DNA of 64,000 nt from Bigelowiella natans CCMP2755 (lineage: Eukaryota; Protista; Cercozoa), in the NCBI GenBank assembly GCA_000320545.1, contig ADNK01001197.1:186001-250000 (forward strand). The letters run 5' to 3'. Both the position numbers and the translations under genes were made by a program. The notes under the pieces were generated by a model. That model was given only the letters and a program-made list of their open reading frames with translations, did not search any database and had not been told where the DNA came from. Shown piece after piece: positions 1 through 23,600 of this stretch (positions are counted from its first letter, which is position 1; each line of letters starts with the position of its first letter).

Positions 1-208
1 AAGCCGCAGTCACCGATTTAGCAACAATAGCAACTCCCCACATTCACCATCATCAAATCGCCCCAACCACGTTAAGATGGCAGAGTTTAGGTCGAGAGAT
101 CTACGAAATCGGGGGAACTTCAGCTCTTCCCCGCCTGTGTCTCCATGGAGAGCATCACAGATGAATCGCCAGAAATCAAACCGAAATCGTGTTCCGTGGC
201 GTAGGTAG
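1..208 (+). CDS. 3' end of an unidentified gene (Ser/Arg/Asn-rich C-terminus, partial)
   Basis: Frame starting at nt 2 is open to TAG at 206-208 (SRSHRFSNNSNSPHSPSS...NRNRVPWRR*); normal TA content, unlike the DNA that follows. Confidence 0.4.
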   Translation, partial: SRSHRFSNNSNSPHSPSSNRPNHVKMAEFRSRDLRNRGNFSSSPPVSPWRASQMNRQKSNRNRVPWRR

Positions 209-574
209 CTCAAATCTTGAGAAGTTTGGAGACTGGTTAATTGGCCACAATGAGCTTCTGCTCAAATGGACAACCCAACAAATGTCAAACATTCTTGTTA
301 ACCAAAACAAACACATCTAAACGCATGTGCATCAATGTTCACATTTGTGGCTGCGCGAAGCGTGACTTGGTCGACACGGTCGTCAGCAATCATGTTAACA
401 ACACAGTGATTTGCACATCTAGCCAGCATGCTAGTATGCGCCATGCACAGTCGCGTGTAGTCGACCTCACATGATCAAAAAGCAGCATGGCTGGCTATAG
501 CCAGGCTGGTCGGTCTAGCGATGCAATGTGTGGATGGCGACCGCTGTGCGACGATCTATCTATGTCCATGTAAC

Positions 575-1015
575 CACATTAGCATTGCACAATTTGCAGC
601 TTGCCGCAAAAAGCGCAGCGTCGCGTGCGTGCAAAAAAATGATTGCATTGAGCATGTGCGCACAGTCGCTTGCGCGTGCACAGCTGCGCGCACTTTTGCA
701 TCGCGCGCATTTGCATTGCGCACGATGCACGTGTGCACACATCGTGCTGCGTGGACGTGCAGTTGTGGCGCACGTGCGCACGTGCGCACATGCACTGCAC
801 GCTCGTGCGTTCCAAAGATGCATGCACGCACGTGTCTGCACGTTGTTTGTTGCGCAATTTTGCAATGCAACGCTCACGTTTTTCGATGAAAAAACGATCG
901 TGCATTGCGTGCGATGCAACTGCACGAGTGCACGCACGCTAGCACGCGTGCACGTGTTCAACGTGCGCAGCCGTCACCAGTGCTTTGGCAGAGCCCGCTG
1001 CCTTGCTCTGTTTGC
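575..1015 (+). repeat. Left long inverted arm of the transposon
   Basis: ~695-763 TTTGCATCGCGCGCATTTGCATTGCGCACGATGCACGTGTGCACACATCGTGCTGCGTGGACGTGCAGT matches the reverse complement of ~4160-4228 with 1 mismatch; ~585-700 matches rc of ~4525-4655; ~870-895 matches rc of ~4078-4103; ~982-1015 matches rc of ~3898-3932. Confidence 0.9.
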
Positions 1016-1146
1016 ACTTTGAGCTGCCATGACAATTTGCTCGCCGTGCAGCGCGTGCAGTGCAAAAAGTGACGCTTTTCAGCGGTGCATGCGATGGCAT
1101 GTCAAAACGACAACTTGCAACAAGCAGCAGCAGCGACACTCCAGCA

Positions 1147-1995
1147 TCAAATTTCAGACTCGTCGCTGCTGCTGCTAGAAAGCACCTTCTTCTCCCCGTC
1201 CCACACCGACTCTTCGAAAAAAAAAATGCCAATGTGCTGATTGGACTTGACCATTTCGCATTGCTCAATGGTGGTTCCATTCGGAACCCGCACATTGAAC
1301 TCGTGCTGGGAGGGAGGCAGTTTCAGTTTTTCAACGTTTCTTTGGCTCTGACTTGCTCAGAAGTCAGAGCCGCCACTTTCGTTGACAAAGCCACCACGTC
1401 AGCTTTTTCCTTTGGTGGCTTTGTTTTCATTGTCACCTGATGCGAACGAACACGCAAGGTGACATCGATTGTGACGAAGCTGCGCAGGGCTTCACATTGA
1501 GTTCCGCTGTGGAACTAGGTGCACCCATGTGAAAGCAAAAGTGAAATGGGAAAGCACCTTTGTCATCGAGTGGACTTTGTCCACCTCGAATTCATGTGAA
1601 GCCCTGCAGAGCTTGTTGATCAACATCCACGTCCCTGAGTCAAGCTCAACTTCAAAGGGCGTGGGGCCGCGGAGCAGCATCTGCTCCGCCAGGTCGCTCT
1701 CAGAGCGACCCATCTCCTCGTCTGCACTTGCGTCGGAGAGGTCATCACTGACCTCCGGATCGTGTTGCCGTGCTCTCTTTCGAGACGGCGTTGAGGAGGA
1801 GGAAAGGCTGCTAGCGGGTTCAAGTCCCAGGGTCCGCGCTCGGCGCTTCACCTGGTTCCCGTTGGCCTTCCCTCGGCCAGAACTGAAGCAAGTTTTCGAT
1901 GGATGAGCCCAGGGCCGGGCAAGCTTGTCAGGAGGGATCGTGCGGATCCACCCTTTCAATTTGCGGTCCATCTCGTCCGTCCACTTCAACCCCAT
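1147..1995 (-). pseudogene. Harbinger-associated Myb/SANT-like DNA-binding protein, degenerate
   Basis: MGLKWTDEMDRKLKGWIRT...PW...F....NQVKRRARTL fits the Myb/SANT W-T-x-E-x-D-x-x-L pattern; probable intron ending ~1438 and a frameshift ~1330; the 185-aa ORF 1492-2049 has no Tyr. Confidence 0.7.
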
Positions 1996-2070
1996 TGGAC
2001 GCAAGCTGCAATTTTTGCGCGCGAGCTGTTGTCGCACTCGCAACGGCAAAAATTGTCCTGCGTGGGGTCA

Positions 2071-2102
2071 CTTGCGACAAGGGACCGGGCCCTTGTCGCA
2101 AG
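2071..2102. promoter_or_regulatory. 32-bp near-perfect palindrome between the divergent transposon ORFs
   Basis: CTTGCGACAAGGG-accggg-CCCTTGTCGCAAG, perfect 13-bp arms; regulatory role is inferred from position. Confidence 0.45.
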
Positions 2103-2631
2103 GGAAAACACCCGCAGAAGCTAGGAGCACTCGAATGTCAAGTTTCGAGAAGCTAGCTTCGGGTCAGATTTGTGTCAAATCACCAGGATTGCAAGTTGCA
2201 CTTGTGCAATCCCGACAGGTGCAGCAGGCGCTTTGTCGCAACGACACAAAGCGTTTGTGCAATGCTTCTGTCGGGAAAACATTGCAACGTCCTGTTGATG
2301 TTTGTGACTCATCTCGACGATCCATGGAAAGCTCGAAGCTCGAAAAAAGCTCGAAGCACAGTGGGCCGTCGATGAAAGCTCGAAGCACACTTGACTTTGT
2401 CGGCGAGCTTTGGGGCCCCTGTTGGAGCTCAAAGCTCAAGCTGCAAAAGACAGGTGCTTTGGGCTCTGTGCTAGCGGGAAACCCACCCCCGCCCGCCACA
2501 GCGCCCACGTTGACGCCAAAGCTCGCGTGCGAAAAAAGCGCACTTTTTCGAAAGCGCAATTGCGCTTCGCGCTTCCAGATTTTTTCGAGCTTTTCGGCGC
2601 AATCGAGCTTTTTCAAAATTGAAATGCAAAC

Positions 2632-3940
2632 TTGGGTACAGGCTCCCATGAGCGTGCCGAAGTTCACAACGCACGTGTGGACCATTGCAACTTCCTCTCC
2701 TTCGTCTGTGAGTTTCACTTTGCTCACAGGAAGGAGGAGGAGAGAGAGGCCTGGGTGGGGCCATTCGAGAGCTACTTCCATGAGTTCTCGCACCCAGCCT
2801 GGATCTCCTCCTTCGGATCAACCGTGGAGGAAGTGCAGCATGCATGGGACAAATGCAGATGTGAAACAGGGTTGTTGCGCAAAGATGTCCTCATCGGACT
2901 GCACTTTGTGTGGGCACATCCGACCCAACATCAAGGTGCAGCCCTGTGGAGGATGCATCGCAACACTTGCAAGTGCAAGTGTTGGGTCCCCGCAATTGCA
3001 TTGTGGGCCCACATGAAAGAAATGAAAATGGACAACAGAAAACATGATTGCATCCACACCAAAGGTCTCGCCTCCCACGTGACCCTGTGCGTCGACGCCA
3101 CAGACGCGCCGATTGGCAAGCCTGCATCCAAGGCTGACCAACGGCGCTTCTGGACGTTTGAAAACAGGAAGTTTGCCAAGAGGCACGTGGCGGCGGCGGC
3201 ATCCGTCGCCACGGGGGACCTCGGGTTGGCAAAGCACACCCCGCTGCCACCGGTGACCTCCCCATCGTTCGTGGGGAAGCCGGGTCAGGCGGGGAGCGCC
3301 TCGACCTGCAGGTCGAGTGGTTTGAGCGAACAGGTGGGGATGGTGCCCACAGGTGTAGGCAGGACCCCAAGTGCATCGCTCCGCGGAGAAAACCGCGCAA
3401 CAAACCAATGGCTGCCGCCGACCGTGAGCACAACACGGAGCACGGCGGCACGCGTGTGATCGCAGAGAACGTGTTCTCCAGGGTCAAGTCCTGGGCGGTG
3501 ATGACCCCGTGGAGGCATCACCGTGATCTTCACGACATTTCTGCTGGCCTGGTGTTCCAATTGACCCAGGTAGGTGCAGAACGTCGTGAAGCTGCACCTG
3601 ATCACGCTGATTGCGTTCGGTATTGTTTCCACAGGTCAAGAACATTTTCAGACCTGTGAGGGCTGGTGTTCGCAACCAGCCCGGGACCAAGCGCAGCTGG
3701 GACGTGGCCCGGGCCACTGGCTCCGTGCCACGTGCAATTCCCGCTGCAAAGTCCAGGGCTGCACGCAGGACATTGGTCTTGCAAAAGCAGCCCAAGCGGA
3801 AAAAGGGTCGTGCCTCCTCGAAGCACGCTGTGGCGCAGGATGCTGCCATGCGTGCATGGGAGGAAAAGATCTACGCAATGCACGCGTGTGATGCAAGGGC
3901 AGACAGAGCAAGACAGCGAGCTCTGTCAAAGCGTGCATGA
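2632..3940 (+). pseudogene. PIF/Harbinger (DDE_Tnp_4-like) transposase, frameshifted and hypermutated
   Basis: D1 motif TLCVDATD (~3080-3105); after a frameshift at ~3230: KAHPAATGD, D2 motif GDGAH (3336-3350), E motif EHNTEHGGTRVIAENVFSRVKSW (3426-3494), then WRHHRDLH; GT-AG intron 3570-3634 (LTQ|VKNIFRP). Confidence 0.85.
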
Positions 3941-4670
3941 CACGTCTGCATCATCAACGCGCACGTGCAGACACGCACGCAAACGCGACACATGTGTGCA
4001 CGCACGTGCCAGCGTGCGCAGTGCGCAAGCATGCATGCACTCAGCTGCATTGCACGCGCATGCAGTTGCACGATTGACTTTTTTCATCGAAAAACGTGAG
4101 CGTCATTGTGTCGCAAAGTTCACGCAACAAACGACGTGTTGATGCGTGCGTGTGCATGCACTGCACGTCCACGCAGCACGATGTGTGCACACGTGCATCG
4201 TGCGCAATGCAAACGCGCGCGATGCAAATGTGTGGACATGCATGTCCCTACACGTGTAGCCGTCTACGACATGTCTAGCATGTGCACATCGCATGCTTCA
4301 CATGCACCCACAGCTGCACATGTGCCAAATGACAGCGCTCACATGTGCACAGATAGCATGCATCCATGTGTGCCATGTGTTGCTTGTGGTGCATGTGTAG
4401 TGGCTTGTTTGGTGCATGTGTGGATGTGAACAGAGCATGTGTGCTTTTTAGGTGCATGTGGTGTGCATGGGTGGATGTGTTCCTTGTGCGCGTACACGCA
4501 CATGGACATGTGTGTCCCCACACAAAAAGTGCGTGCAACTGTTCACGCGCGAGCTGATGCGCACGCGCAACTGACTGTGCGTGCGTGCTCAACGCAATCA
4601 GTTGTCTGCACGCACGCGACGCCGCGCTTCTTGCGGCAAGCTGCAATTGGTGCAATCTAGCAATGCCACA
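3898..4670 (-). repeat. Right long inverted arm, interrupted by a ~290-bp insertion (4230-4523)
   Basis: Reverse-complement similarity to 575-1015 in blocks; 4230-4523 has no counterpart on the left and is bounded by a degenerate 24-bp direct repeat. Confidence 0.85.
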
Positions 4671-5595
4671 CATGTCCCAGGGAACATGTGTGCTTTTGAC
4701 CCGGTACGCTCTATAGCCATACTAGCATGTAAGGCTATGTATCTAACAATGGCATGGATGTGGAACGTTAATCACAACTAGATGCATGTAACCCAGCAAC
4801 GTCAATTGTCCCAACGCTATGGCAACACGTCTAGAAGTGTGCGATGCGTGGACAACTAATGCACAGCTCTAGAGCGCTAGATAGCACATGATGCGCCACT
4901 CAGCAGTTACTTACATTGATTGTCTTCGATCATTGTCACAGATGTCATCTAGCTAGTAGATCTAGAGATGCTTTTGCTAATGGATTGGCGAATTGTAGCA
5001 ACATGCATGCTGGTGGTGCTTGCTAGCTTGTCAGTCTGTCATTCATTTTGACAGACCTCACTGTGCGACACCACTAGACCATGCTAGCATGCTCTTACGA
5101 AGCACATGCTGCATTTAGTGCATGTGTGGAAGATGTACGATGGCTTTGTTGCATCAGTGCATGCTCACTTTACTTTCATTCAGATTCGCGATGATCACGC
5201 ACATGCACAATGTCTAGATGTGACGTCAAACGCTTAGCACGCAACATCGGTCCCTTTGTAATCCCTTGTGAAATCATGCCTGATATTTTGATGGAACCGC
5301 CCTTGTGATGCACACCTAGTTCTTTTTTGCACCATTTGTGCGTCGTATGCCAGAATTGTCAAAACAAATTTCCACCAGGTTTCGGTCTAGTTGGATGATC
5401 ATGCTGAATAGCCTTGCGGGCCCTTCACACACAAACAATGTTTCATCGACACATAGTATCGCATCTTTCGCAGTGCATATATTCTTAGAAAGAATAGGCA
5501 CCCTAATTGACATTAAATTGAATGTCTGATAAAAATAATGCAATCTATTAACTGTACTATCCTTGTAAATCAACTTCATCTGCCTTGACGCCCAA

Positions 5596-6136
5596 TCAAT
5601 AAAATCCTATTTCGCCAAGGTTTTGTGTCAACACAAACTTCTTGCAAGCGCGGAACACCTGTGTACCCACATTTAATTGTAATGGCAGACTCAATGATTG
5701 ATAATGGGGTATCGTTACCCTATCTATATTGTCGGTGTCGAGCCCACATGTGAAGTACGTATACACGTTCTTTTCTACTTTGACCCTTGAAATAAACAAC
5801 TTCTGCACATATTTCTGGACTTCTTTCAATTCGTTCGGGCCTATAGAAGTGTCGTTTTACGTGAAATACACTTTCCGCATAATAACACATAATTAATACC
5901 TTCGTAGCCGAAGACACCTTTGAATGGGACATGTGGCAGTTTCTCTCGCAAGAGATCTATCTTATTCAGAAACAGAATCATACCGGATTCCGCAAAGGTA
6001 TCATTATTTGCTATTTTTTCAAATTCGTTCAGAGCCTAAAACATGCAAAAACAAAAATAATAATAAAGTTAGCTTCAAATTTCAGGACTCTTTTAGCGGA
6101 TGTGTTGGCACGGGAGGAGAAAGAGGGATACATATA

Positions 6137-11119: not shown

Positions 11120-11204
11120 TGTAAGACGGATGTAATGAATCAAATTAAATTTATTTAATGGTCATTCTCATGTAGCTGTGCAATGCAGCGGCTACAGCGC
11201 TGAT
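11120..11204 (+). repeat. ~85-bp dispersed repeat, copy A (inverted relative to 14544-14627)
   Basis: Reverse complement aligns to 14544-14627 with 7 substitutions and one 1-nt indel. Confidence 0.9.
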
Positions 11205-12427
11205 AATAATATTGAATTTTTAAGCTTGTACCGTAGTCTATTGTTAGGGCCATCAGTGTGCATGCGTGCAGCTGAACGAGTACCAAAGAGTATGTAGCCT
11301 CTGTGCCTACGTGTCTCTGTAGTTTCACCACTAGACCAGTATATAATAGACACAGGAATACCATATGGATATATGTGTCCCTATATGGAATTCCCTAGCT
11401 GTCTATAATCAGTAGACACTACGCATGTAATTGCTACCTATAGACCGGCGCACACGAGTAATCAAGTAATCTCTGCCAGTATCTAGTGCCGTTGTATAGT
11501 TGCACGTCGTACGCATAGATCGCTGCGATGGTTTGATCGTCCGTTCACGCACGTATAAGCTGACTAGCTGACGGCTGCGTATGTACGTCCACACATAGTG
11601 AGCTCGCCTGGCATTACGTTAACTGTGTACATACATCGTCTACAACATACAGACAGCAAGATACAGATGGTGTAGTACGTCGTCTTTGTAATAAATCGAT
11701 GACATTCGAAATCTGAAGGTCGAGCTTCTCTCTACTTTTTGTCAGTAGTGTACCAGGTAAATTACGCATACACGCTTAGCCAAACTTTAGCGTTTCCCAG
11801 ATATCTACGTATATTTTCAAGAATTTCGTTATGTCGTTTACTGTAAAGCATATAAACTAAAACACGTAGGTCCACATTAAATTGCAATACTGTCTCGGAT
11901 CACACATGATGATTACTCTACGATTCCTCTCTGTGAGTAGTCTCCAAAAACATAAATACCTGCGTTTTTACGCACTTGAGCAAGAATCTAAATTCATTTT
12001 CACACTTCCCCTGAAAAATGATGAAAATAAAAGGCATTGGGTGATTTTATTTCTACCAGGTTGAAGAAAGGAACCTTAGACATCGAGTTGATGTTGGACG
12101 CAATGCAGCGGCCGTATGTCGATGCCTTGGAAAGTAGTAACAGGTTTTTCAGCTCCTCATAGTAAGGGAGAATAATAATAGATGTTGAAGTTTCAATACA
12201 AAACGAAATCCTATTTAAGAATACTATATACTCCTATCGTAAATGAGAAGATATACCTCTGATCCACATTTGGCATAAGCCTTGGCAAGACGAGAAACCA
12301 AGCTGCGGGGAGGTCCTGACGGCATTTACACTGCAAATCCAAACCTGATATCAAAAGAAAGTTTTTTGTCGGTAGGATTAACCAATATTTGGTTAGAGAA
12401 TGGCTACCCTAAGTGCAAGTCTCTCTC

Positions 12428-12468
<41 letters not shown>

Positions 12469-12661
12469 ATGCACTTGTTCGTGTGTTTACTTGCATATGT
12501 AGTGAGTTTAAACTGATGAACCCTACAATTTCCCCAGTACCGATGATGCTCTGGTATCGGGTGGCAAGGAGGCAGAGGAGGCAGAGGAGGCAGAGGAGGC
12601 AGAGGATGATGAGGAGGAGGAGTGGCGAAAGGACAATTGCTCTGGTTACGAGTACGAAGGT

Positions 12662-12772
12662 AAGTCGCACCCTTGATTATCCCCATGTTTTGCATCTTGC
12701 GACAACAACAAGAAGTAATAGTAATAGAAGTCGCATCCTTGATTATCCCCATGTTTTGCATCTTGCGACAAC
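12662..12772 (+). repeat. Tandem duplication (45-bp core, 66-bp period) upstream of the fibrillin gene
   Basis: AAGTCGCA(C/T)CCTTGATTATCCCCATGTTTTGCATCTTGCGACAAC at 12662 and 12728. Confidence 0.9.
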
Positions 12773-12913
12773 GACAACAACAGGAACAACAATACGGCCA
12801 AGCAATCACGTCGGGAGGGCCCGGCGAGGAGGCGCATGGTTGTGGAACGTCTTATTTCTTATCGAATTCAATTCTGTGTTAGATAATTGGTAACCTGTAT
12901 ACTTGTTGCGTAG

Positions 12914-14244
12914 TTGCGTGACGTCGTCGCCGTCTTCGTCACAGTGCTTCTCGCTGCACAAATCACAGCCCGCTCGACGACTCTTACAGGACGAGCGACG
13001 GCTGTGAGAGTAAGAGGAATCGGGAAACCTTTTGGAGCTAGTGTGGAAAGTTTGCTAAGCCTTCGAAAAAGACTCGAACGTAATAGAAAAATACTTAGTA
13101 AGTGCAGCAAGAACAGGGGCTCAGAGTGGAAGGATGCATCTACACACATAGAACCCTTGAAAACCCGACTGTTTGGAGCAATCGCAGCAAGACCCCAGGT
13201 ATACGAAAATTAATGGATATTTTTTGATTCCTCTTTATCTTATATATGTCATCATTGTAATTTCAACTTACTTGGTAATGCGAAAGCGAACCAAAAATAG
13301 CTCTAATTGCCGTGCGTGCTTGTTTGCAGGTTACGCAAGACATCCTTTCGGCAATCGAAAGCATTGAGAGAGAGGGGGGGCAATGCTCAGATTTTATGTC
13401 AATATCAGGCAGATGGTCATTGGTCTACTCAACTCAAACTACTACTTCATTCACTATGGCCCAATCGCAGCAGCAGCAGCAGGCACAGGACCTGATAGAT
13501 TCAGTCATTCAAGGCAGCACTGCAGCTTTGTATAGGTACCAGTTTGTTGAATAATTTTGTACGAGTAGTGATACTTGAATGGCACGGTCCTCCTCCTACC
13601 TTATATTACAAAACCAGGTTCTTCTTTAAGTTTGCCCCAGCCCTGGCTGGGGCACAGGAACAGGACCGAGACGAAGATCTACGAGACTTTTTCGGTGGAG
13701 GAGTAAAAAATGAACAGATTGTAGACATTGAGAAAGGTCTTGTGAGCAACAAGGTATTGTTTATCAATTTCTTATTAATTCAGTTTCATATTGCAAGTGT
13801 GCACATTTTTCCGTTCTCATGATTGTCATGCTGAACACTAAGGTTCAAGCTCGGTTTTCAAAGAACGGCCCTTCGCTAAAAATCAATGTCGTCGGAGAAT
13901 GCACACCATCAAATGATAGTATGAGCAATCTTCAGGTCATATTCACGGAATTCTCAGTTGAAATTCCATGGACGAGGTATTTCTTGGTGTGTGAAAATCC
14001 ATGTTTTTGTCAATGTACAATTTGTGCATGTACATGTGGTGTACCTTATTACACATGTGTCACAAATGCAATCAAAGATCTTCTTGTGCGTTTGGGCTGT
14101 GATGTTTTTAGAGTTGGGCTCGTGACTGTGCCATTGCCAAGGCCGCGAGGTGCCTTAGAGACAACTTTCTGTGATGAAAACTTGAGAATTTCTAGAGGAG
14201 GCAGAGGTGGAATCTTCGTTCTTAAGCGATTGCGGCCAAATTGA
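12914..14244 (+). CDS. PAP/fibrillin-family plastid lipid-associated protein with bipartite leader (multi-exon; start Met possibly at 12836)
   Basis: ISGRWSLVYST and LETTFCDENLRISRGGRGGIFVLKR are the fibrillin N- and C-terminal signatures; leader VVAVFVTVLLAAQITA followed by a basic Ser/Thr-rich stretch. Confidence 0.88.
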
Positions 14245-14543
14245 TTCGAATGAGTCCTGTAATGAGCTGTAGCACTGCACAATTATGCGAGTTTGTGTTC
14301 ACGTGAATTGAAAATCGGGAGAGGCTGTGCATGTGTAGGGCTGATTTGCGCCACAGCGTACTGGTGTGTGTGTAGCCCAGCCGACAGGACATGACAATAA
14401 CACGCAGATTTGGGATTAGCTACTGCACGTGCAGATGCTGAATGCACTGTGAATCAAGCGTAGTATGGCCTACTGTGATGCTGTCTCTGCATTGTTAGCG
14501 CAGTCTAATGTGCTTTTTCAAAACTTGAAGTACACATGTCCAC

Positions 14544-14627
14544 ATTAGCGCTGTAGCCGCTGCATTGCATAGCTACATGAGGATAACCATTGAACAAATT
14601 TAATTGATTAATTACATCCGTCTTACA
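14544..14627 (-). repeat. ~85-bp dispersed repeat, copy B
   Basis: ATTAGCGCTGTAGCCGCTGCATTGCATAGCTACATGAGGATAACCATTGAACAAATTTAATTGATTAATTACATCCGTCTTACA, inverted partner of 11120-11204. Confidence 0.9.
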
Positions 14628-15021
14628 TGTATAGACATGTCTAACAAGTAGATGTGTCACAGTCTAGCAGTGTTCGTTTTGATCTCATTGTGATTTGCAA
14701 CATTGCGTGCAAGATGCACTGTCTAGCTATGCCACAACGTACTATAGGCGAAACCTGGGAATTTCACGGTTTCGCATGTTTCCTGCGATGCAAGAACTGA
14801 AGCAATGCAGCGGCACTGCATGATTTGTGTGAAAATATAAAAAAAAACACATTTTGGCTTGGTTCGAGAAAGAAAACTCAATTTTTGAATGTGCTCGAGG
14901 TCAATTTCTGACAAAATTTGCTTGAGGTCTGAAAAAAACGCAAAATTTCGAAGTCACTAAACCACGAAGTAAACTCAAAATTTCGCGCAGCTTTCTCATT
15001 TTCGTGATTGGTCATGCTTCA

Positions 15022-15419
15022 CAAGTCCGTCAAACACAATAAACCTGTAACGAATTGCCAGAATGTGCATTTGGAAGCTTTTGCGCGCGACCAAGCGCGT
15101 CATGTGATGCAATGGACATTGGATTTGCTCGCATTTCTTTGAAATTTTTCGTGCACATCACATTTGGTCAAACGCACACGCAAAAGCATTCAAAATGTGG
15201 CAGAGAACAAACGCGCAGCGTGCATCCGCTGCACAACGGGTGTGAATTTTCACACTTTGAGGCCTTGAAAATGGACATTTTGGTTAACATTTCGGTCATT
15301 TTTTCAGGTTTGGCCATCGGACAAGTTCTGATGACTTTTCTTTGACTAACTGCAACTGCCCGCTGCTTCAAAGCGCTGCACTGTTCACAACCCCATCGTT
15401 GCCGGGTTTGACGGACTTG
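15022..15419. mobile_element. 398-bp MITE-like element with 14-bp perfect TIRs (probably Tc1/mariner type)
   Basis: CAAGTCCGTCAAAC (15022-15035) and GTTTGACGGACTTG (15406-15419); flanks CA (15020-21) and TG (15420-21), read as an edited TA TSD. Confidence 0.7.
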
Positions 15420-16285
15420 TGTTGACAGGTGCTCCTGGCTGTCCATGTCAGGATGGTCATGTGCTCACGTGGTGTTTTCAGGTTCACTTTTTGATCGTGC
15501 GTGGCCGCACTAGATCGCACTGAGCATTGTCAGAATTTTCGGCCTTTTTTGGCTCCGTCTCCTAGAATGCTTGCATCGCCTACTTGTGGCTAGCACAACT
15601 AGCTATGCTACGCTGCTCAACATCAGAACAGCTCAATTAGACTTGGACTTGCGAATTCACCAATTTCTGTGTCCAGCGCGCACGGCTAGACGGTGCTGAT
15701 GTTGTGCTTTGCACATCTGTCTACTGTGCATGATGCGCGCCAGCTGTAGCTCCACAACTAGATGCGTGCTTGCACTACACAACACGTAGTGCTGTGTCTC
15801 ATCTACACTCACAGCTGTTGGTGGAGCGCACATCCATGCGTACTGTAGACATTTACGACGACAAGCTGTGCCAACATTGATCCATTCTAGTGCGTGCTAC
15901 ACAGTGATAGTTGCTAGGTTGCGGCAGTTCCAGTGAACCGATTGTTTTCTGTACCGATCGCTTATTGTGCATGCATCGTTGCGACACAAGTACATGTAGG
16001 AACACCCTGCATGTTCACTCTCCGCCGACGTGCATGTTCATCATGTGTGTTAGTTTGGAGATACACTGCATGCACATACAAATACTACCCGCAAGCAAGG
16101 TGCATGCCCATAGCTAAATAGTAGCGTAACATGTACGTATGCAACTTGAAGGAGCGTGTGTGAACATAGTGAACACGTAGATCCACTTTTACATAATATA
16201 TACCTATACTTACACCTGCCAGCCTACGGCGATGCACACTCACACACTCACACACTCACACACTCACACACACACACACACACAC

Positions 16286-20276: not shown

Positions 20277-20353
<77 letters not shown>

Positions 20354-20903
20354 TCTTTTGTGCAGCAGTCACTTTAGATGAACTGTATCGCCTAATATGC
20401 AAACGGACAAGAATACACATGATGACGACGATGACAATAACGTTGACGAAGACACCAAGTATTCGCTTATATTGTAGCAAACTCAACACAGGAGGAAAGA
20501 TATGTGCATAAATAATGATGATGATGATGAGCACTTGATGTCGGTTACCTCGCCTTAGACTTTGAATCAGTGGCCGTCGAAGTCGTAGACATCTGTACGT
20601 GTGTGCATTGTGTGTGGTAAGAAAAAGAGAAAGGAAGGGGAAAGGAGGGGGAAAGAGGAACAAATGGAGGATAACAGGGGGTGGGTGGGATATGTGAACT
20701 GCTGTATAAAATATAGATGCTATATGCGGCAGTAAGTGGGTGGGATATGTGAACTGCTGTATAAAATATAGATGCTATATGCGGCAGTAAGATTCTGGAA
20801 ATGTTAGCAGCCAAAGCATATGTGAGTTACAATTTTTAATTTGATAGGTGGTCAGTGGGTGATGTTTAGCAGTTAGTGAAAGCTACTTTTGTTGTTCTTT
20901 TTA

Positions 20904-20939
<36 letters not shown>

Positions 20940-23600
20940 TGGAAGAATTTGAAAGGCTGCTATTAGACTTGAAAATTATAGCTTGCTGTCTTGATTGCGC
21001 TGAAGATTTTGGGAGCATACTAGAGTCTTGTCGGCTACTTGATCAAACAAAAACAACAACAACAACAACGACGAGTACAGTACTAACTTGAGTAGCTGCG
21101 TGAAAGGAGAGGTTAGCACTAATTATTATTATTACTACTACTATTTATTACCTTTGAGCATTTGCCCATCGGTAGGCCCCCCCAGTCTTACCCAGAGCAT
21201 GCAAGCCATTTGGCTGCTGCTGAGGCCGTACTTGTGAGGTAGGCGTTTTCGTTCCCATGTCTTTTTGCGATTGTTGCATCTTGTTGTTTCCAACTTTTGC
21301 CCCCTTGGGTACCTGCTAGAAGCAGCAGCAGTAGTAGTAGTAGTAGTAGTAGTAGGAATGGCAGTTTTGGAGATGCGTGATTAACAATTATTACTCTACT
21401 TTCGAGTTTATATGCACAGCAGCAGCAGCAGTAGTAACAACAATCATTTGATAACGATATTGATGATGTTATTATTATTATTATTATTATCATTATTAGT
21501 CTAACCACCTGCTTTTGCCCAGCAAGCCATTTTTCTAGCATGACAGGGTCTCTGAGCAGTTTGCCGTGAATGGCCGCTGGAATATCGTTCTTAGTGTAAT
21601 AGACCATCGAAGCTTGACGGAACAAATATCTGGATGGATTGGAAAAGGCACACTCCTTGGACACCTTCTTCATTCTTCTCAGAAGTTCCAGAGTTGGATG
21701 CATCTTTGCTCGAGGCCGAGGTGTAAACATGTGAGGCTGTGATGATTCAGGATGATACTTTGCCATATGTGCCCTTCTCCTATCTTCCGTAGTAGCAGCA
21801 GCAGCAGTAGCAGCAGTTTCCCCGCATCCAAATGAAGAAGAAGAAGTAATAGTAGTAGATGTAGGCGTGGTCCCCGAGAAGTAGTCAATCATCTTATCTT
21901 CTGTGTTATTCCTCCATACTTTAGGAGTAATATTATTATTTTTTTGACGTCCTCCTGTCCTCATGAGAGTGGAGAGGCTGCTTTCTGATGGAGGTTGTGT
22001 GGTGGGGACATAACGCTTGTATATTCGTTTGGATCTGGTAGGCTTCATAGCAATACGCATCTCATCACGTGTGAGTCGTCGGGTCAAATTAGTTTTGAGG
22101 TTGTAACTTGCGACAGTCGCTGCCTGCAGCACTCGAGGAGAAGGCTCGAAGCTCACTTGCGGTCCACAAACCATGAGAAGCTTCTCTTCAAACGCTTGAC
22201 ACACCTTCAAGAATGCCTCTTCATCTTTAATGTGCCTTCCTTGATTGGACATGTTAGAGCGATATTGGGATGCAAGAAGCAACGAATCGCTGAGGATGTT
22301 ATAACCAGTAGGTTTGAGGAGAATGCGCCTTCTTATAACGTTCTTGTAGTTTCTCGTAACATGTCTGTAGTCGTGGATTTCTGCAATAAGACAACCATTG
22401 TAGAACTTTATTGGAAGCTCTTGCATCAAATTCTCAAAGAAGCTCGGAATTTCCCCGGCGTCAACTGCTTGCAGGAATATCCTGTTTTGGAGGCTGTATT
22501 TGTGGAAATTTTTGTCCCTTGAGTTCACAGTAAAACCTCCTTGGTACAAATGTAAAATGAGCGAGGCCTTTAAATCGTTTCCCATTCTATCGATTGCAAA
22601 TGCAGAGTCGCCATGTAGATCGGAAAAAAGCTGAGTTTTGGATGCCAGGTTGAGCTGCAGCTGGTGTCTAGAAAGTTTAGCCTCGAATGACTGTTTCTTC
22701 TCTCCAGGAGATAGGCCATAGCGCAACCAGCTCGGTTTCTTTTTTGCATACAATTCCGTAAATCGTGCTCGTGTTTGGACACGATCATTTTCCCTCAGCC
22801 AGTTAAATAATTCTGCCGGAGTAAAGGGACCGCGGCGGTATGGATCAATCGCCCTTTTCGTGGCTTGAAGTTGCTGATCTATAAATCTCTTCACCGCATT
22901 TTGATCCTTATTGCTCATTGCTTTCTTGACATTAATTATCTCCGTAATGTTAACGAACATCGAGGGGGGAGGGGAACGTGGGCCTGAGCTAGTGGATGAT
23001 GGGGTAGAGAGGCTGCTTTTTGATGAGTGCTTTTTAGCAGCTTTATTCGAGCCTACTATCGTAGACATTGACTTCGTGTTTCTAGGTCTTCCGCGAACAA
23101 GTCCTTTTTTCACTTTTGATTCTATAAATCTCCCGCGCTTACGCTTGATACCTGTTGGGAACACCTCGTGAATGCTTTCGTTGGTTTGAGTACTGCACTA
23201 ATGAATAATAATATGCAACAAGAACAGTTTTCTACTTTTTACTAATTGGGAGGAGAACCTTTTTTTCTAATCTGGAATGTGACAGGTGGAGCTCCCTGCC
23301 TCATGGCCTTGCTCCGCGCAGCAACTGCGGCCTTTTGCATCTAGAAATTAAAATTTGATGTTATAATAGCTAGAGATTGTTTCATGTAGTTATAGAAGAA
23401 GGGCATTGTTAACCGGTTTCCTCTTTCTTCTTATGTTTCAGGGGCGCAAGAGGCCAACAATGAGGTGTACCGTTCTGGAGAGCTGAAATGCAAGGGGACT
23501 CGAGCGGAGTCCCTTGTTGTCTGTCTGGCCCTTCTGAATCAATATTCAAAGAAATGAAGGACATTTTTCGTGTAAGACAACCATTTCTTTACGGTCTTAT
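18946..23600 (-). CDS. SPT20: SAGA subunit Spt20-family protein (large exon ~21500-23164, Gln/Ala-rich tail; 5' end uncertain)
   Basis: SLILHLYQGGF...FLQAVDAGEIP...FYNGCLIAEIHDYR...RRILLKPT...FEPSPRV is the Spt20 domain; downstream exons with (QA)n/polyA; last exon MMNGGNGGKGK* stops at 18946-18948. Confidence 0.85.
20681..20790 (+). repeat. Perfect 55-bp tandem duplication within the SPT20 locus
   Basis: GTGGGTGGGATATGTGAACTGCTGTATAAAATATAGATGCTATATGCGGCAGTAA x2. Confidence 0.95.

What the first reader, a model, noticed from the sequence alone, without database searches (positions are those of the whole stretch)
582..4247. Candidate 'reverse-RIP' genome-defence system: near-total TpA -> TpG/CpA (A->G) hypermutation of a transposon
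Seen: a hand count finds only 13 TA dinucleotides in these 3,666 bp. About 150 would be expected if A and T are each ~20% (by-eye estimate), and neighbouring exons carry roughly 2-5 TA per 60 nt. AA, AT and TT runs persist (e.g. A10 at 1217) and CG is abundant, while TG/CA is hugely over-represented (TGCA, CACG, CATG). Established: fungal RIP goes the other way (CpA->TpA) and 5mC decay removes CG, so neither explains this; GC-biased conversion is not TA-specific. Inference: adenines in 5'-TA were changed to G on both strands, specifically in repeat/silent DNA. Candidate mechanisms are a TadA/ADAT-like DNA adenine deaminase (a natural adenine base editor; TadA-derived editors favour TA), deamination of a modified adenine, or polymerase-eta-like error-prone synthesis at WA/TA. 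I know of no characterised pathway of this kind.
Basis: partly seen in the sequence, partly recalled or inferred. Interest (0 to 1): 0.97.

Follow-up and report, generated by a model that had tools for sequence, protein, structure and literature searches.

The report
TpA-erased Harbinger transposon in Bigelowiella
A dead jumping gene in the alga Bigelowiella natans has had almost every TA step changed to TG or CA after it landed; this striking, targeted mutation process is real, but a 2026 preprint already showed it experimentally in this species.

Summary
In detail: 13 TA in window 582-4247 against 177 expected (O/E 0.07), with TG/CA at 1.5 and CG unchanged. The stretch is one copy (about 582-4660) of a PIF/Harbinger DNA transposon of Bigelowiella natans, with long inverted ends, a broken transposase and a nested small repeat. 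The TA loss is mutation, not native composition. Sister copies differ at 74 dinucleotide columns by CA versus TG. A related TA-bearing copy differs from its 96%-identical twin almost only by TA->CA/TG. Ten of 12 tyrosines of the unedited transposase are His or Cys here. The change is limited to TpA, hits both strands equally without strand runs, stops near the element's ends, and follows location, not repeat family. CTAG largely escapes. The element is transcriptionally silent in one RNA run.

This is the TpA->TpG/CpA hypermutation of integrated foreign DNA that Mettrop et al. (bioRxiv 2026) showed by mutation accumulation in this species. They also noted TpA-poor DDE-endonuclease genes. This scan met it twice before on other DNA of this genome. 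So the process is already known and its enzyme is still unknown. New here: independent editing of each copy, CTAG immunity, sharp borders, and no dependence on repetition.

The parts
582..4660 (+). One copy of a PIF/Harbinger DNA transposon, hypermutated at TpA (transposase orientation +)
   Evidence: Inverted terminal arms. Full-length copies on C891 and C2101 at 87-88% identity and fragments elsewhere, all TA-free with sharp edges. The conserved terminus GCATTGCAC starts at 582, and a diverged right-end terminus lies at about 4650-4660.
582..4249 (.). Main TA-erased tract (13 TA; 7 of them in CTAG)
582..960 (.). Left terminal inverted repeat
   Evidence: Arms 584-691, 691-780 and 870-894 pair with the right end.
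3900..4232 (.). Right terminal inverted repeat, inner part
   Evidence: Arm 4143-4232 is 90% and arm 4079-4103 is 100% complementary to the left arm.
4233..4548 (.). Nested ~290-bp MITE-like repeat inserted in the right arm, only partly edited (8 TA, O/E 0.40)
   Evidence: It interrupts the inverted repeat and is absent from the C891 copy. The genome holds at least 25 copies. TA content of the copies tracks their flanks. Read depth is very high.
4549..4660 (.). Right terminal inverted repeat, outer part
   Evidence: Arm 4549-4656 is 84% complementary to 584-691. The terminus is compared among copies.
2372..3937 (+). Remnant of the DDE_Tnp_4 (Harbinger) transposase gene, in pieces 2372-2506, 2650-3294, 3225-3596 and 3632-3937, with a frame change near 3225-3294
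   Evidence: tblastn of JGI Bigna1 models P0001-P0004, all of which carry PF13359. A weak DDE_Tnp_4 match lies at 3408-3659 (17.9 bits). Ten of 12 Tyr of the unedited relative P0002 are His or Cys here.
1492..2049 (-). Second ORF of the element (185 aa), at the position of the Harbinger accessory DNA-binding protein; no family match
   Evidence: ORF. It is homologous to a 162-aa ORF of the TA-bearing relative, L042:4095-4583. Pfam gives nothing for either.

Best explanation
[quoted passage not shown] After it inserted, it was subjected in place to the alga's TpA-specific hypermutation of integrated foreign DNA. Nearly every 5'-TA-3' step was changed by an A:T-to-G:C transition, giving TG when the top-strand A was hit and CA when the bottom-strand A was hit. 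SHOWN here: (1) the change is a mutation made separately in each copy, not an inherited composition; (2) it is confined to TpA, with at most a roughly 400-fold weaker CpA->CpG side reaction; (3) the two strands are hit equally and independently from site to site; (4) it runs to saturation about 1000 times faster than background divergence; (5) it is bounded by the inserted element to within tens of bases, and it co-edits whatever is nested inside; (6) it depends on location and not on repeat family or copy number; (7) CTAG, and more weakly any TAG/CTA, resists, while A/T-flanked TA goes first; (8) in one RNA-seq run, of which about 6% was read, the edited element has no RNA cover while both neighbours are expressed. 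INFERRED: the chemistry is most likely deamination of adenine to inosine in DNA by an enzyme that needs a 5' T (my odds about 0.55). The targeting most likely uses a cis-acting, heritable silencing mark or guide laid on the insertion, not homology between repeats. The outcome is permanent inactivation: Tyr codons become His or Cys, TAA and TAG stops are lost, and the transposase scores below its family threshold.
For: Composition: 13 TA against 177 expected, TG and CA at 1.5.

Independent editing: in the three-way alignment of the window, C891 and C2101 copies, 74 dinucleotide columns are CA-versus-TG discordant. No other double difference exceeds 4 columns.

Polarised spectrum 1: at 21 TA columns of TA-bearing copies of the nested repeat, six edited copies show CA 58, TG 53, TA 9 and other 4. 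A not preceded by T, and T not followed by A, hardly change.

Polarised spectrum 2: the TA-bearing Harbinger copy C2929:11197-15538 and its 96.5%-identical twin C2929:20284-23474 differ in a 3.1-kb core as follows. At 73 sites TA became CA (43) or TG (30). Two or three TA are kept (CTAC, CTAG, GTAG). There are only 10 other differences. The runs test gives z = 0.16, and the rate ratio is about 1000 or more.

Protein level: P0002 has 12 Tyr, and the window has His 4, Cys 6, Tyr 1 and Phe 1 at those positions. P0002 passes DDE_Tnp_4 (33.6 bits, cut-off 24.8), while the window ORF reaches 17.9 bits.

Location rule: copy TA O/E against flank TA O/E gives Spearman 0.87 for the nested repeat family and 0.76 for a second family.

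Edges: 7-9 TA lie in the first 100 bp outside either end, against 0-4 in the first 300 bp inside (profiles).

CTAG: 60 of 192 residual TA in 38.8 kb of TA-free DNA, against 3.5% in the background (8.9-fold, p = 2e-39).

RNA: depth is about 0 across 601-4200 and 10-13 in the flanks.

Organism: all homologues are JGI Bigna1 gene models.

Precedent: the mutation-accumulation experiment in B. natans found 230 of 231 new mutations in two viral inserts to be A->G or T->C, all at TpA. It also reported 324 TpA-poor CDS enriched for 'DDE superfamily endonuclease' and 124 TpA-poor clusters.
Against: No new mutation was observed at this locus. The only DNA data that could be laid were assembled contigs, which cross-map between paralogous copies, and the element is already saturated.

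The spectrum cannot tell an A-directed enzyme from a T-directed one, because TpA is its own reverse complement.

No unusual deaminase was found. The inventory is six ordinary CDA-fold loci and one ADAT1-like gene.

The natural ADAT2/3 substrate context (U33-A34) fits the 5' T, but it does not predict CTAG immunity.

The TA-bearing Harbinger core nested in a 15-kb erased domain on C2929 is not explained by a simple domain model, unless it arrived recently or editing is episodic.

Silence rests on one RNA run of which about 6% was read.
Confidence: 0.88

Rival explanations
1. The process is thymine-directed. A TET/JBP-like or other enzyme modifies T in 5'-TA (for example to 5-hydroxymethyl- or 5-formyl-uracil), which mispairs with G and gives T->C. 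The TG products are the same event on the other strand.
For: TpA is palindromic, so the spectrum fits equally well. From general knowledge, 5-hydroxymethyluracil in dinoflagellates is enriched at TpA, and 5-formyluracil is known to cause T->C. The weak side reaction reads as TG->CG, that is T before a purine.
Against: The only Tet_JBP match in the genome is below threshold (23.5 bits against a cut-off of 34.9) and is broken by stops. No evidence for such a base in chlorarachniophytes was found in the papers read.
Confidence: 0.1
2. Error-prone synthesis by a polymerase-eta-like enzyme at WA motifs, during repair directed to silent DNA.
For: From general knowledge, polymerase eta makes A->G errors at WA, with TA preferred, as in somatic hypermutation.
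Against: AA is untouched: A after A gave 1 change in 18, and AA/TT O/E is 1.35 with A10 runs kept. Transversions at the edited A are almost absent (2 of 125). Conversion goes to 93-97% saturation with only 0.3% collateral change, which is not what patch synthesis would give.
Confidence: 0.03
3. The element never had TA. The composition is native to the transposon, or is kept by selection such as avoidance of a TA-cutting nuclease or codon choice.
For: All full copies of this subfamily are TA-free. The TA-poor inverted ends of the C2929 copy are 100% identical to each other, so some TA-poverty can be inherited.
Against: There are 74 CA/TG discordant columns between sister copies. A TA-bearing relative differs from its twin almost only at TA. 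Tyr is replaced by His or Cys at conserved transposase positions. Non-coding arms and a nested foreign repeat are affected alike.
Confidence: 0.02
4. RNA-level A-to-I hyperediting (ADAR-like, on double-stranded transcripts of the inverted ends) is copied back into DNA by reverse transcription or gene conversion.
For: From general knowledge and the preprint's discussion, ADARs prefer a 5' U. The element has long inverted repeats that could give double-stranded RNA.
Against: This is a cut-and-paste DNA transposon. Editing covers the whole element, including unpaired internal parts and a nested repeat, on both strands equally. The single A_deamin gene looks like ADAT1, with no double-stranded-RNA-binding domain found. 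The preprint saw the mutations arise in place in a single-copy, transcriptionally silent insert. ADARs favour a 3' G (general knowledge), whereas TAG resists here.
Confidence: 0.03

Closest known systems
TpA-specific hypermutation of integrated viral DNA in Bigelowiella natans (Mettrop, ..., Piganeau, Krasovec; bioRxiv 10.64898/2026.01.13.699255)
   Same: Same organism, same dinucleotide target, same products (TpG and CpA), same restriction to foreign inserted DNA, and a similar rate excess of about 1000-fold. The preprint also lists TpA-poor CDS enriched for DDE-superfamily endonuclease and reverse transcriptase, and 124 TpA-poor clusters.
   Different: The preprint measured new mutations in two viral inserts (NCLDV, virophage) that are only partly depleted (Rho TpA 0.45, or even TA-rich). 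This locus is a transposon driven to saturation. The preprint's main text does not mention CTAG or any context beyond the dinucleotide. In the parts I read it does not compare individual copies, map borders or test dependence on repetition.
Repeat-induced point mutation (RIP) of ascomycete fungi
   Same: A dinucleotide-specific transition hypermutation that permanently inactivates transposons in the genome, leaving a skewed dinucleotide signature with sharp borders.
   Different: The direction is opposite: RIP makes TpA from CpA, and here TpA is destroyed. RIP is triggered by duplication and homology during the sexual cycle. Here repeat-family membership does not predict editing, a near-identical neighbour is spared, and the preprint saw editing of a single-copy region in clonal vegetative lines.
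AID/APOBEC cytosine deaminase mutagenesis of viruses and retroelements
   Same: Host-driven, context-specific base deamination used against foreign nucleic acid. This is inferred for the present case.
   Different: AID/APOBEC gives C->U, not A->G. It acts on single-stranded DNA and leaves strand-coordinated clusters, whereas strand choice here is random from site to site (runs test z = 0.16). No APOBEC_N match was found in the genome.
ADAT2/ADAT3 (TadA family) tRNA adenosine deaminases, their reported DNA activity, and TadA-derived adenine base editors
   Same: A->I chemistry gives A->G. The natural substrate A34 always follows U33, which matches the 5'-T requirement. The preprint names a B. 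natans ADAT2 homologue as a candidate and cites DNA editing by amphioxus ADAT2. TadA/ADAT-like loci are present in the genome.
   Different: No evidence links these housekeeping genes to the process. CTAG immunity and apparent action on both strands of duplex DNA are not known properties of these enzymes. No extra or domain-fused copy was found.

Membership tests
B. natans TpA->TpG/CpA localized hypermutation (preprint 10.64898/2026.01.13.699255) | Substitutions fall on TpA and yield TpG or CpA only | tested here: met
   At TA columns, CA 58, TG 53, TA 9 and other 4. In the C2929 twin comparison, 73 of 83 core differences are TA->CA/TG. There are 74 CA/TG discordant columns among sister copies.
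B. natans TpA->TpG/CpA localized hypermutation (preprint 10.64898/2026.01.13.699255) | Same organism | tested here: met
All four homologues of the transposase are JGI Bigna1 gene models.
B. natans TpA->TpG/CpA localized hypermutation (preprint 10.64898/2026.01.13.699255) | Confined to integrated foreign DNA, with neighbouring host DNA unaffected | tested here: met
   The TA profile drops at the element ends in the window and in other copies. The expressed flanks have normal TA.
B. natans TpA->TpG/CpA localized hypermutation (preprint 10.64898/2026.01.13.699255) | Rate about three orders of magnitude above background | tested here: met
   97% of TA sites are converted, against 0.3% change at other sites in the same 3.1 kb. 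The ratio is about 1000 or more.
B. natans TpA->TpG/CpA localized hypermutation (preprint 10.64898/2026.01.13.699255) | New mutations arise in clonal lines at this locus | tested here: inconclusive
   Only assembled contigs of the 2025 DNA runs could be laid. The unique flanks are identical to the reference, and inside the element the contigs mix paralogues.
Fungal RIP | C->T transitions (CpA->TpA), so TpA is enriched | tested here: not met
   TpA is destroyed, at O/E 0.07, and the polarity is TA->CA/TG.
Fungal RIP | Triggered by sequence duplication, so all sizeable repeats are hit | tested here: not met
   Two repeat families with at least 25 and at least 40 copies are edited only in or beside TA-free DNA. 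A 96.5%-identical twin is spared.
PIF/Harbinger DNA transposon | DDE_Tnp_4 (PF13359) transposase | tested here: met
   The unedited relative P0002 scores 33.6 bits against a cut-off of 24.8. P0001-P0004 carry PF13359. The window copy itself is degraded to 17.9 bits.
PIF/Harbinger DNA transposon | Terminal inverted repeats | tested here: met
   The arms are 84-100% complementary. The terminus is conserved among copies.
PIF/Harbinger DNA transposon | Second ORF encoding a Myb/SANT-like DNA-binding protein | tested here: inconclusive
   A conserved second ORF exists on the opposite strand, but it has no Pfam match.
PIF/Harbinger DNA transposon | 3-bp target-site duplication (TWA) | tested here: inconclusive
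   The terminus is preceded by TTA, TTG or TCA at both ends when each end is read inward. That pattern fits an edited terminal TTA rather than a clear direct duplication.
Polynucleotide adenine deamination (ADAT/TadA/ADAR type) | A->I chemistry on the DNA of the target | not testable with these tools
   This needs inosine mapping or enzyme assays. Only the A:T->G:C outcome and the 5'-T requirement are seen.
Polynucleotide adenine deamination (ADAT/TadA/ADAR type) | A candidate enzyme is encoded in the genome | tested here: met
   There are six CDA-fold loci, including TadA/ADAT2-like and ADAT3-like ones, and one A_deamin (ADAT1-like) gene. None is unusual in architecture.

The most novel reading that the evidence does not exclude
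The editing machinery is aimed at individual insertions by a cis-acting, heritable mark or guide. The evidence is borders sharp to tens of bases, nested passengers co-edited, and an all-or-none difference between 96%-identical copies about 5 kb apart. A second layer exempts CTAG. That layer is either a host modification of CTAG, such as N6-methyladenine that would block deamination, or an enzyme pocket that rejects C at -2 and G at +1 on duplex DNA. Such an enzyme would be a natural, double-strand-acting adenine base editor with a four-base immunity rule. The preprint does not describe this.
Probability: 0.3. Interest if true: 0.8.

Novelty: already known. Interest (0 to 1): 0.45.

Why it matters
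The process is the mirror image of fungal RIP: a eukaryote erases one dinucleotide from invading DNA by A:T->G:C transitions. It is the first candidate for a natural DNA adenine editor used as genome defence. That claim belongs to the 2026 preprint, not to this locus.

This locus adds constraints for the search for the enzyme and its guide:
- The end state of the process on a transposon family, at 93% TA loss.
- Proof that each copy was edited separately after insertion.
- Editing follows place and not repeat family.
- CTAG escapes, and A/T-flanked TA goes first.
- The two strands are hit independently.

There is also a practical point. TA-free DNA cannot contain TAA or TAG stops, so it throws up long false ORFs, and gene models in such tracts deserve suspicion.

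Tried and rejected
1. Looking for new mutations at this locus. The DNA runs that hold it are kept only as assembled contigs. Inside the element these mix paralogous copies (paired TG<->CA 'other letters'), and the unique flanks are identical to the reference. Nothing could be concluded.

2. Pfam on the window's own ORFs. It gave only a sub-threshold DDE_Tnp_4 match. Family membership had to come from the unedited relative.

3. Target-site duplication. No clean 3-bp direct repeat was found. The TTA next to the terminus behaves as part of the inverted end.

4. Strand-specific context rules (-2 and +1 bases of the edited A). With 73 polarised events no single-position rule reached significance (ATAA 8:0 but TTAT 4:4). 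Only CTAG/TAG resistance and A/T-flank preference stand.

5. Enzyme hunting in the genome. Tet_JBP was sub-threshold only, and APOBEC_N and OTT_1508 deaminases gave nothing. The MafB19/TadA-type search returned the same six loci as dCMP_cyt_deam_1. These are six-frame, exon-by-exon searches, so absence is weak evidence. Y-family polymerases and chromo/SET fusions were not searched.

6. The CpA->CpG side reaction. It is seen as 4 of 10 non-TA differences in the C2929 pair and about 10% of CA/TG sites in old edited repeat copies. CG->CA changes also occur there, so it stays tentative.

7. A 2026 paper on a rhizarian genome that mentions B. natans repeats proved irrelevant; it concerns AC/GT microsatellites.

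Majority states were used only inside scripts to count changes.


Full report
**1. The observation**

Window 582-4247 contains 13 TA dinucleotides where base composition predicts 176.7 (O/E 0.07). TG and CA stand at 1.50 and 1.54, CG at 0.99, and AA and TT at 1.35. The remainder of the 64-kb window has TA O/E near 0.79 and a mean TA-to-TA spacing of 14 bp. Inside the stretch, TA-free gaps reach 583 bp. The probability of so few TA by chance is below 1e-40 on any reasonable expectation. Contigs from independent 2025 DNA runs match parts of this copy letter for letter, so the sequence is real.

**2. What the stretch is**

The tract is one copy of a transposon with long terminal inverted repeats. 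The left arm is 582-~960. The right arm is ~3900-4232 plus 4549-~4660. It is split by a 316-bp nested insertion (4233-4548) that the C891 copy lacks.

The genome (91.4 Mb) holds two more near-full copies, on C891 and C2101 at 87-88% identity, plus fragments and a second subfamily on C2929 at about 70%.

The only homologues of the main ORF, among 5.8 billion proteins, are four JGI 'Bigna1' gene models. All carry PF13359, the DDE_Tnp_4 transposase of PIF/Harbinger elements. This fixes both the organism (Bigelowiella natans, as earlier notes of this scan say) and the superfamily. The unedited relative P0002 passes the Pfam threshold (33.6 bits against 24.8). The window's own ORF reaches only 17.9 bits.

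The transposase remnant lies at 2372-3937 on the + strand, in four pieces with a frame change. A second conserved ORF lies at 1492-2049 on the - strand, without any family match.

**3. Mutation or native composition?**

Three independent tests say mutation, made after each copy inserted.

(a) In the three-way alignment of the window, C891 and C2101 copies, 74 dinucleotide columns show CA in one copy and TG in another. Every other kind of double difference occurs at most 4 times. Only an ancestral TA resolved independently to TG or CA explains this.

(b) The small repeat nested in the right arm has at least 25 copies. Seven of them are TA-rich. At the 21 columns where those have TA, six TA-poor copies have CA 58 times, TG 53 times, TA 9 times and anything else 4 times. 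A after A or G, and T before C or T, hardly change.

(c) On contig C2929 a Harbinger copy with normal TA in its core (11197-15538, gene model P0002) has a 96.5%-identical inverted twin about 5 kb away (20284-23474) that is TA-free. In 3.1 kb of shared core they differ as follows. At 73 sites TA became CA (43) or TG (30). Two or three TA are retained. There are only 10 other differences.

At the protein level, the 12 tyrosines of P0002 correspond in the window copy to His 4, Cys 6, Tyr 1 and Phe 1. This is exactly what TAY->CAY or TGY gives.

**4. Properties of the process that can be read from these data**

*Specificity.* TpA is the target. A possible side reaction, CpA->CpG, accounts for 4 of the 10 non-TA differences in the C2929 pair (about 0.8% of CA/TG sites against 97% of TA sites). 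It is tentative.

*Strand.* CA and TG are equally frequent. The order of outcomes along the copy is random: 37 runs against 36.3 expected, z = 0.16. This argues against processive action on one exposed strand, the hallmark of APOBEC-type clusters.

*Rate.* About 3.6 hits per TA site accumulated while other sites changed by 0.3%, a ratio of about 1000 or more. This is in line with the preprint's measured excess.

*Context.* In 38.8 kb of non-redundant TA-free DNA, 192 TA survive. Sixty of them are CTAG, 8.9 times the background share (p = 2e-39). ATAT and ATAA are under-represented, at 0.18-0.28. In half-edited repeat copies, the A/T-flanked sites are already converted while GTAC, CTAC and TAG sites are not. 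Seven of the window's 13 survivors are CTAG.

*Borders.* There are 7-9 TA in the first 100 bp outside either end, against 0-4 in the first 300 bp inside. The other copies show the same step. The terminal TTA is TTA at the window's left end but TTG or TCA at five other ends.

*Trigger.* Repetition is not the trigger. For the nested repeat family, TA O/E of a copy tracks TA O/E of its flanks (Spearman 0.87). For a second family of at least 40 copies (window 15041-15422), copies with both flanks normal keep 5.1 TA on average. Copies touching TA-poor DNA keep 1.0 (Spearman 0.76, Mann-Whitney p = 1.6e-4). The C2929 twins show that near-identity to an edited copy 5 kb away does not cause editing.

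*Expression.* In one RNA-seq run, of which about 6% was read, depth is about 0 over 601-4200. It is 10-13 in the left flank and up to 11 in the right flank.

*Age.* After the discordant sites are removed, the three copies still differ by about 5%, so they are old. The nested repeat, with O/E 0.40 against 0.07 for its host, probably arrived later and was edited for a shorter time. This is inference.

**5. Comparison with what is known**

A preprint, posted in 2026 in a version dated April 2026 (Mettrop et al., 10.64898/2026.01.13.699255), reports a mutation-accumulation experiment in B. natans. Of 302 new nuclear single-nucleotide mutations, 231 fell in two integrated viral regions. Of those, 230 were A->G or T->C, and all of these were at TpA. 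The rates were about 6e-7, against 3.5e-10 elsewhere, and the mutations appeared only in some lines.

The authors then found 324 TpA-poor predicted CDS enriched for 'DDE superfamily endonuclease' (the Pfam description of PF13359) and for reverse transcriptases. They also found 124 TpA-poor, CpA+TpG-rich clusters genome-wide. They proposed DNA adenine deamination and named an ADAT2 homologue as candidate.

The present locus is therefore an instance of a described process in the same genome. Two earlier follow-ups of this scan reached the same reading on other DNA (s1-710593, s1-417258).

The preprint's main text has no mention of CTAG or of any context beyond the dinucleotide. In the parts I read it does not compare individual copies, map borders or test dependence on repetition.

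From the preprint's numbers one can roughly infer 211/(3132 x 6169), or about 1e-5 per TA per generation. Then 93% loss needs a few hundred thousand generations. This is my arithmetic on their figures, not their claim.

**6. Mechanism**

The chemistry is not shown by anyone yet. I favour adenine-to-inosine deamination in DNA by an enzyme needing a 5' T (odds about 0.55). The reasons are these:
- The products are pure A:T->G:C transitions.
- The 5'-pyrimidine preference (T far above C) is what a -1 pocket would give.
- ADAT2/3 always edits an A that follows U33 (textbook knowledge).

The genome encodes six CDA-fold loci: two guanine/cytosine-deaminase-like, one dCMP deaminase, two TadA/ADAT2-like and one ADAT3-like by motif. 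It also encodes one ADAT1-like A_deamin gene. None has an unusual architecture. No APOBEC or OTT_1508-type deaminase was detected, and only a broken, sub-threshold Tet_JBP match.

A thymine-directed modification cannot be excluded from sequence, because TpA is palindromic. Polymerase-eta-type synthesis is disfavoured because AA is spared and transversions are lacking.

For targeting, several facts point to a cis-acting mark or guide on the insertion rather than homology sensing. These are the sharp borders, the co-editing of nested passengers, the sparing of identical family members elsewhere, and the silence of the element. The spared TA-bearing core inside a 15-kb erased domain on C2929 fits either recent arrival or the episodic activity the preprint saw. 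It remains unexplained.

**7. Verdict**

The central inference is correct, the 'repeat-induced' flavour and the novelty claim are not, and the enzyme is unknown. The phenomenon is remarkable but already reported. The value added here is the set of constraints listed in section 4.

Noticed in passing
G000:C2929:11197-15538 (L042:1197-5538) and C2929:20284-23474: A Harbinger copy has a TA-bearing core, 100%-identical 542-bp inverted ends and an apparently whole DDE_Tnp_4 gene model (P0002). It sits inside a 15-kb TA-erased domain. Its 96.5%-identical inverted twin about 5 kb away is fully erased. The ends and one side of the TA-bearing copy are themselves TA-poor and concordant with the twin, so part of the TA loss was inherited.
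   Followed up: partly
window 15041-15422: A ~390-bp repeat has at least 40 copies at 90-97% identity. The family is TA-poor overall (0-8 TA per copy). Copies touching TA-poor DNA have about 1 TA, and copies in normal DNA about 5. Many copies have one TA-poor and one normal flank, so this may be the end of a larger element.
   Followed up: partly
window 400-4500 and all TA-free tracts: TA-free DNA cannot contain TAA or TAG stops. As a result, 44 ORFs of 50 aa or more overlap this 4-kb stretch (window 400-4500), spread over several frames and both strands. JGI gene models lie on edited copies (P0001, P0003 and probably P0004, which has 1 Tyr). Gene predictions in such tracts are suspect.
   Followed up: no
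window 1-400 and 4600-5600: Both flanks of the silent element are transcribed. A poly(A)-tailed transcript end lies near position 321 on one side, and there is opposite-strand cover of 4600-5600 on the other.
   Followed up: no
window 579-581 and the ends of the copies in L002, L003 and L004: The trinucleotide just outside the conserved terminus GCATTGCAC is TTA at the window's left end but TTG or TCA at five other ends. Editing therefore reaches the very last TA of the element.
   Followed up: partly
C2929 core comparison; edited copies of the nested repeat: A possible weak secondary reaction, CpA->CpG (TG->CG on the other strand), accounts for 4 of 10 non-TA differences in the twin pair. It might explain why CpG O/E is about 1.0 in edited DNA against 0.74 in the window as a whole.
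   Followed up: partly
G000:C2607:11363-11530 (L040): This is the only Tet_JBP-like match in the genome. It is below threshold (23.5 bits) and is interrupted by two stops.
   Followed up: no
G000:C2101:33828-35933 (between L003 and L019): The C2101 copy of the element carries a ~2.1-kb insertion in its left arm. The part of it covered by L003 and L019 is TA-free, which suggests another nested element co-edited with its host.
   Followed up: no
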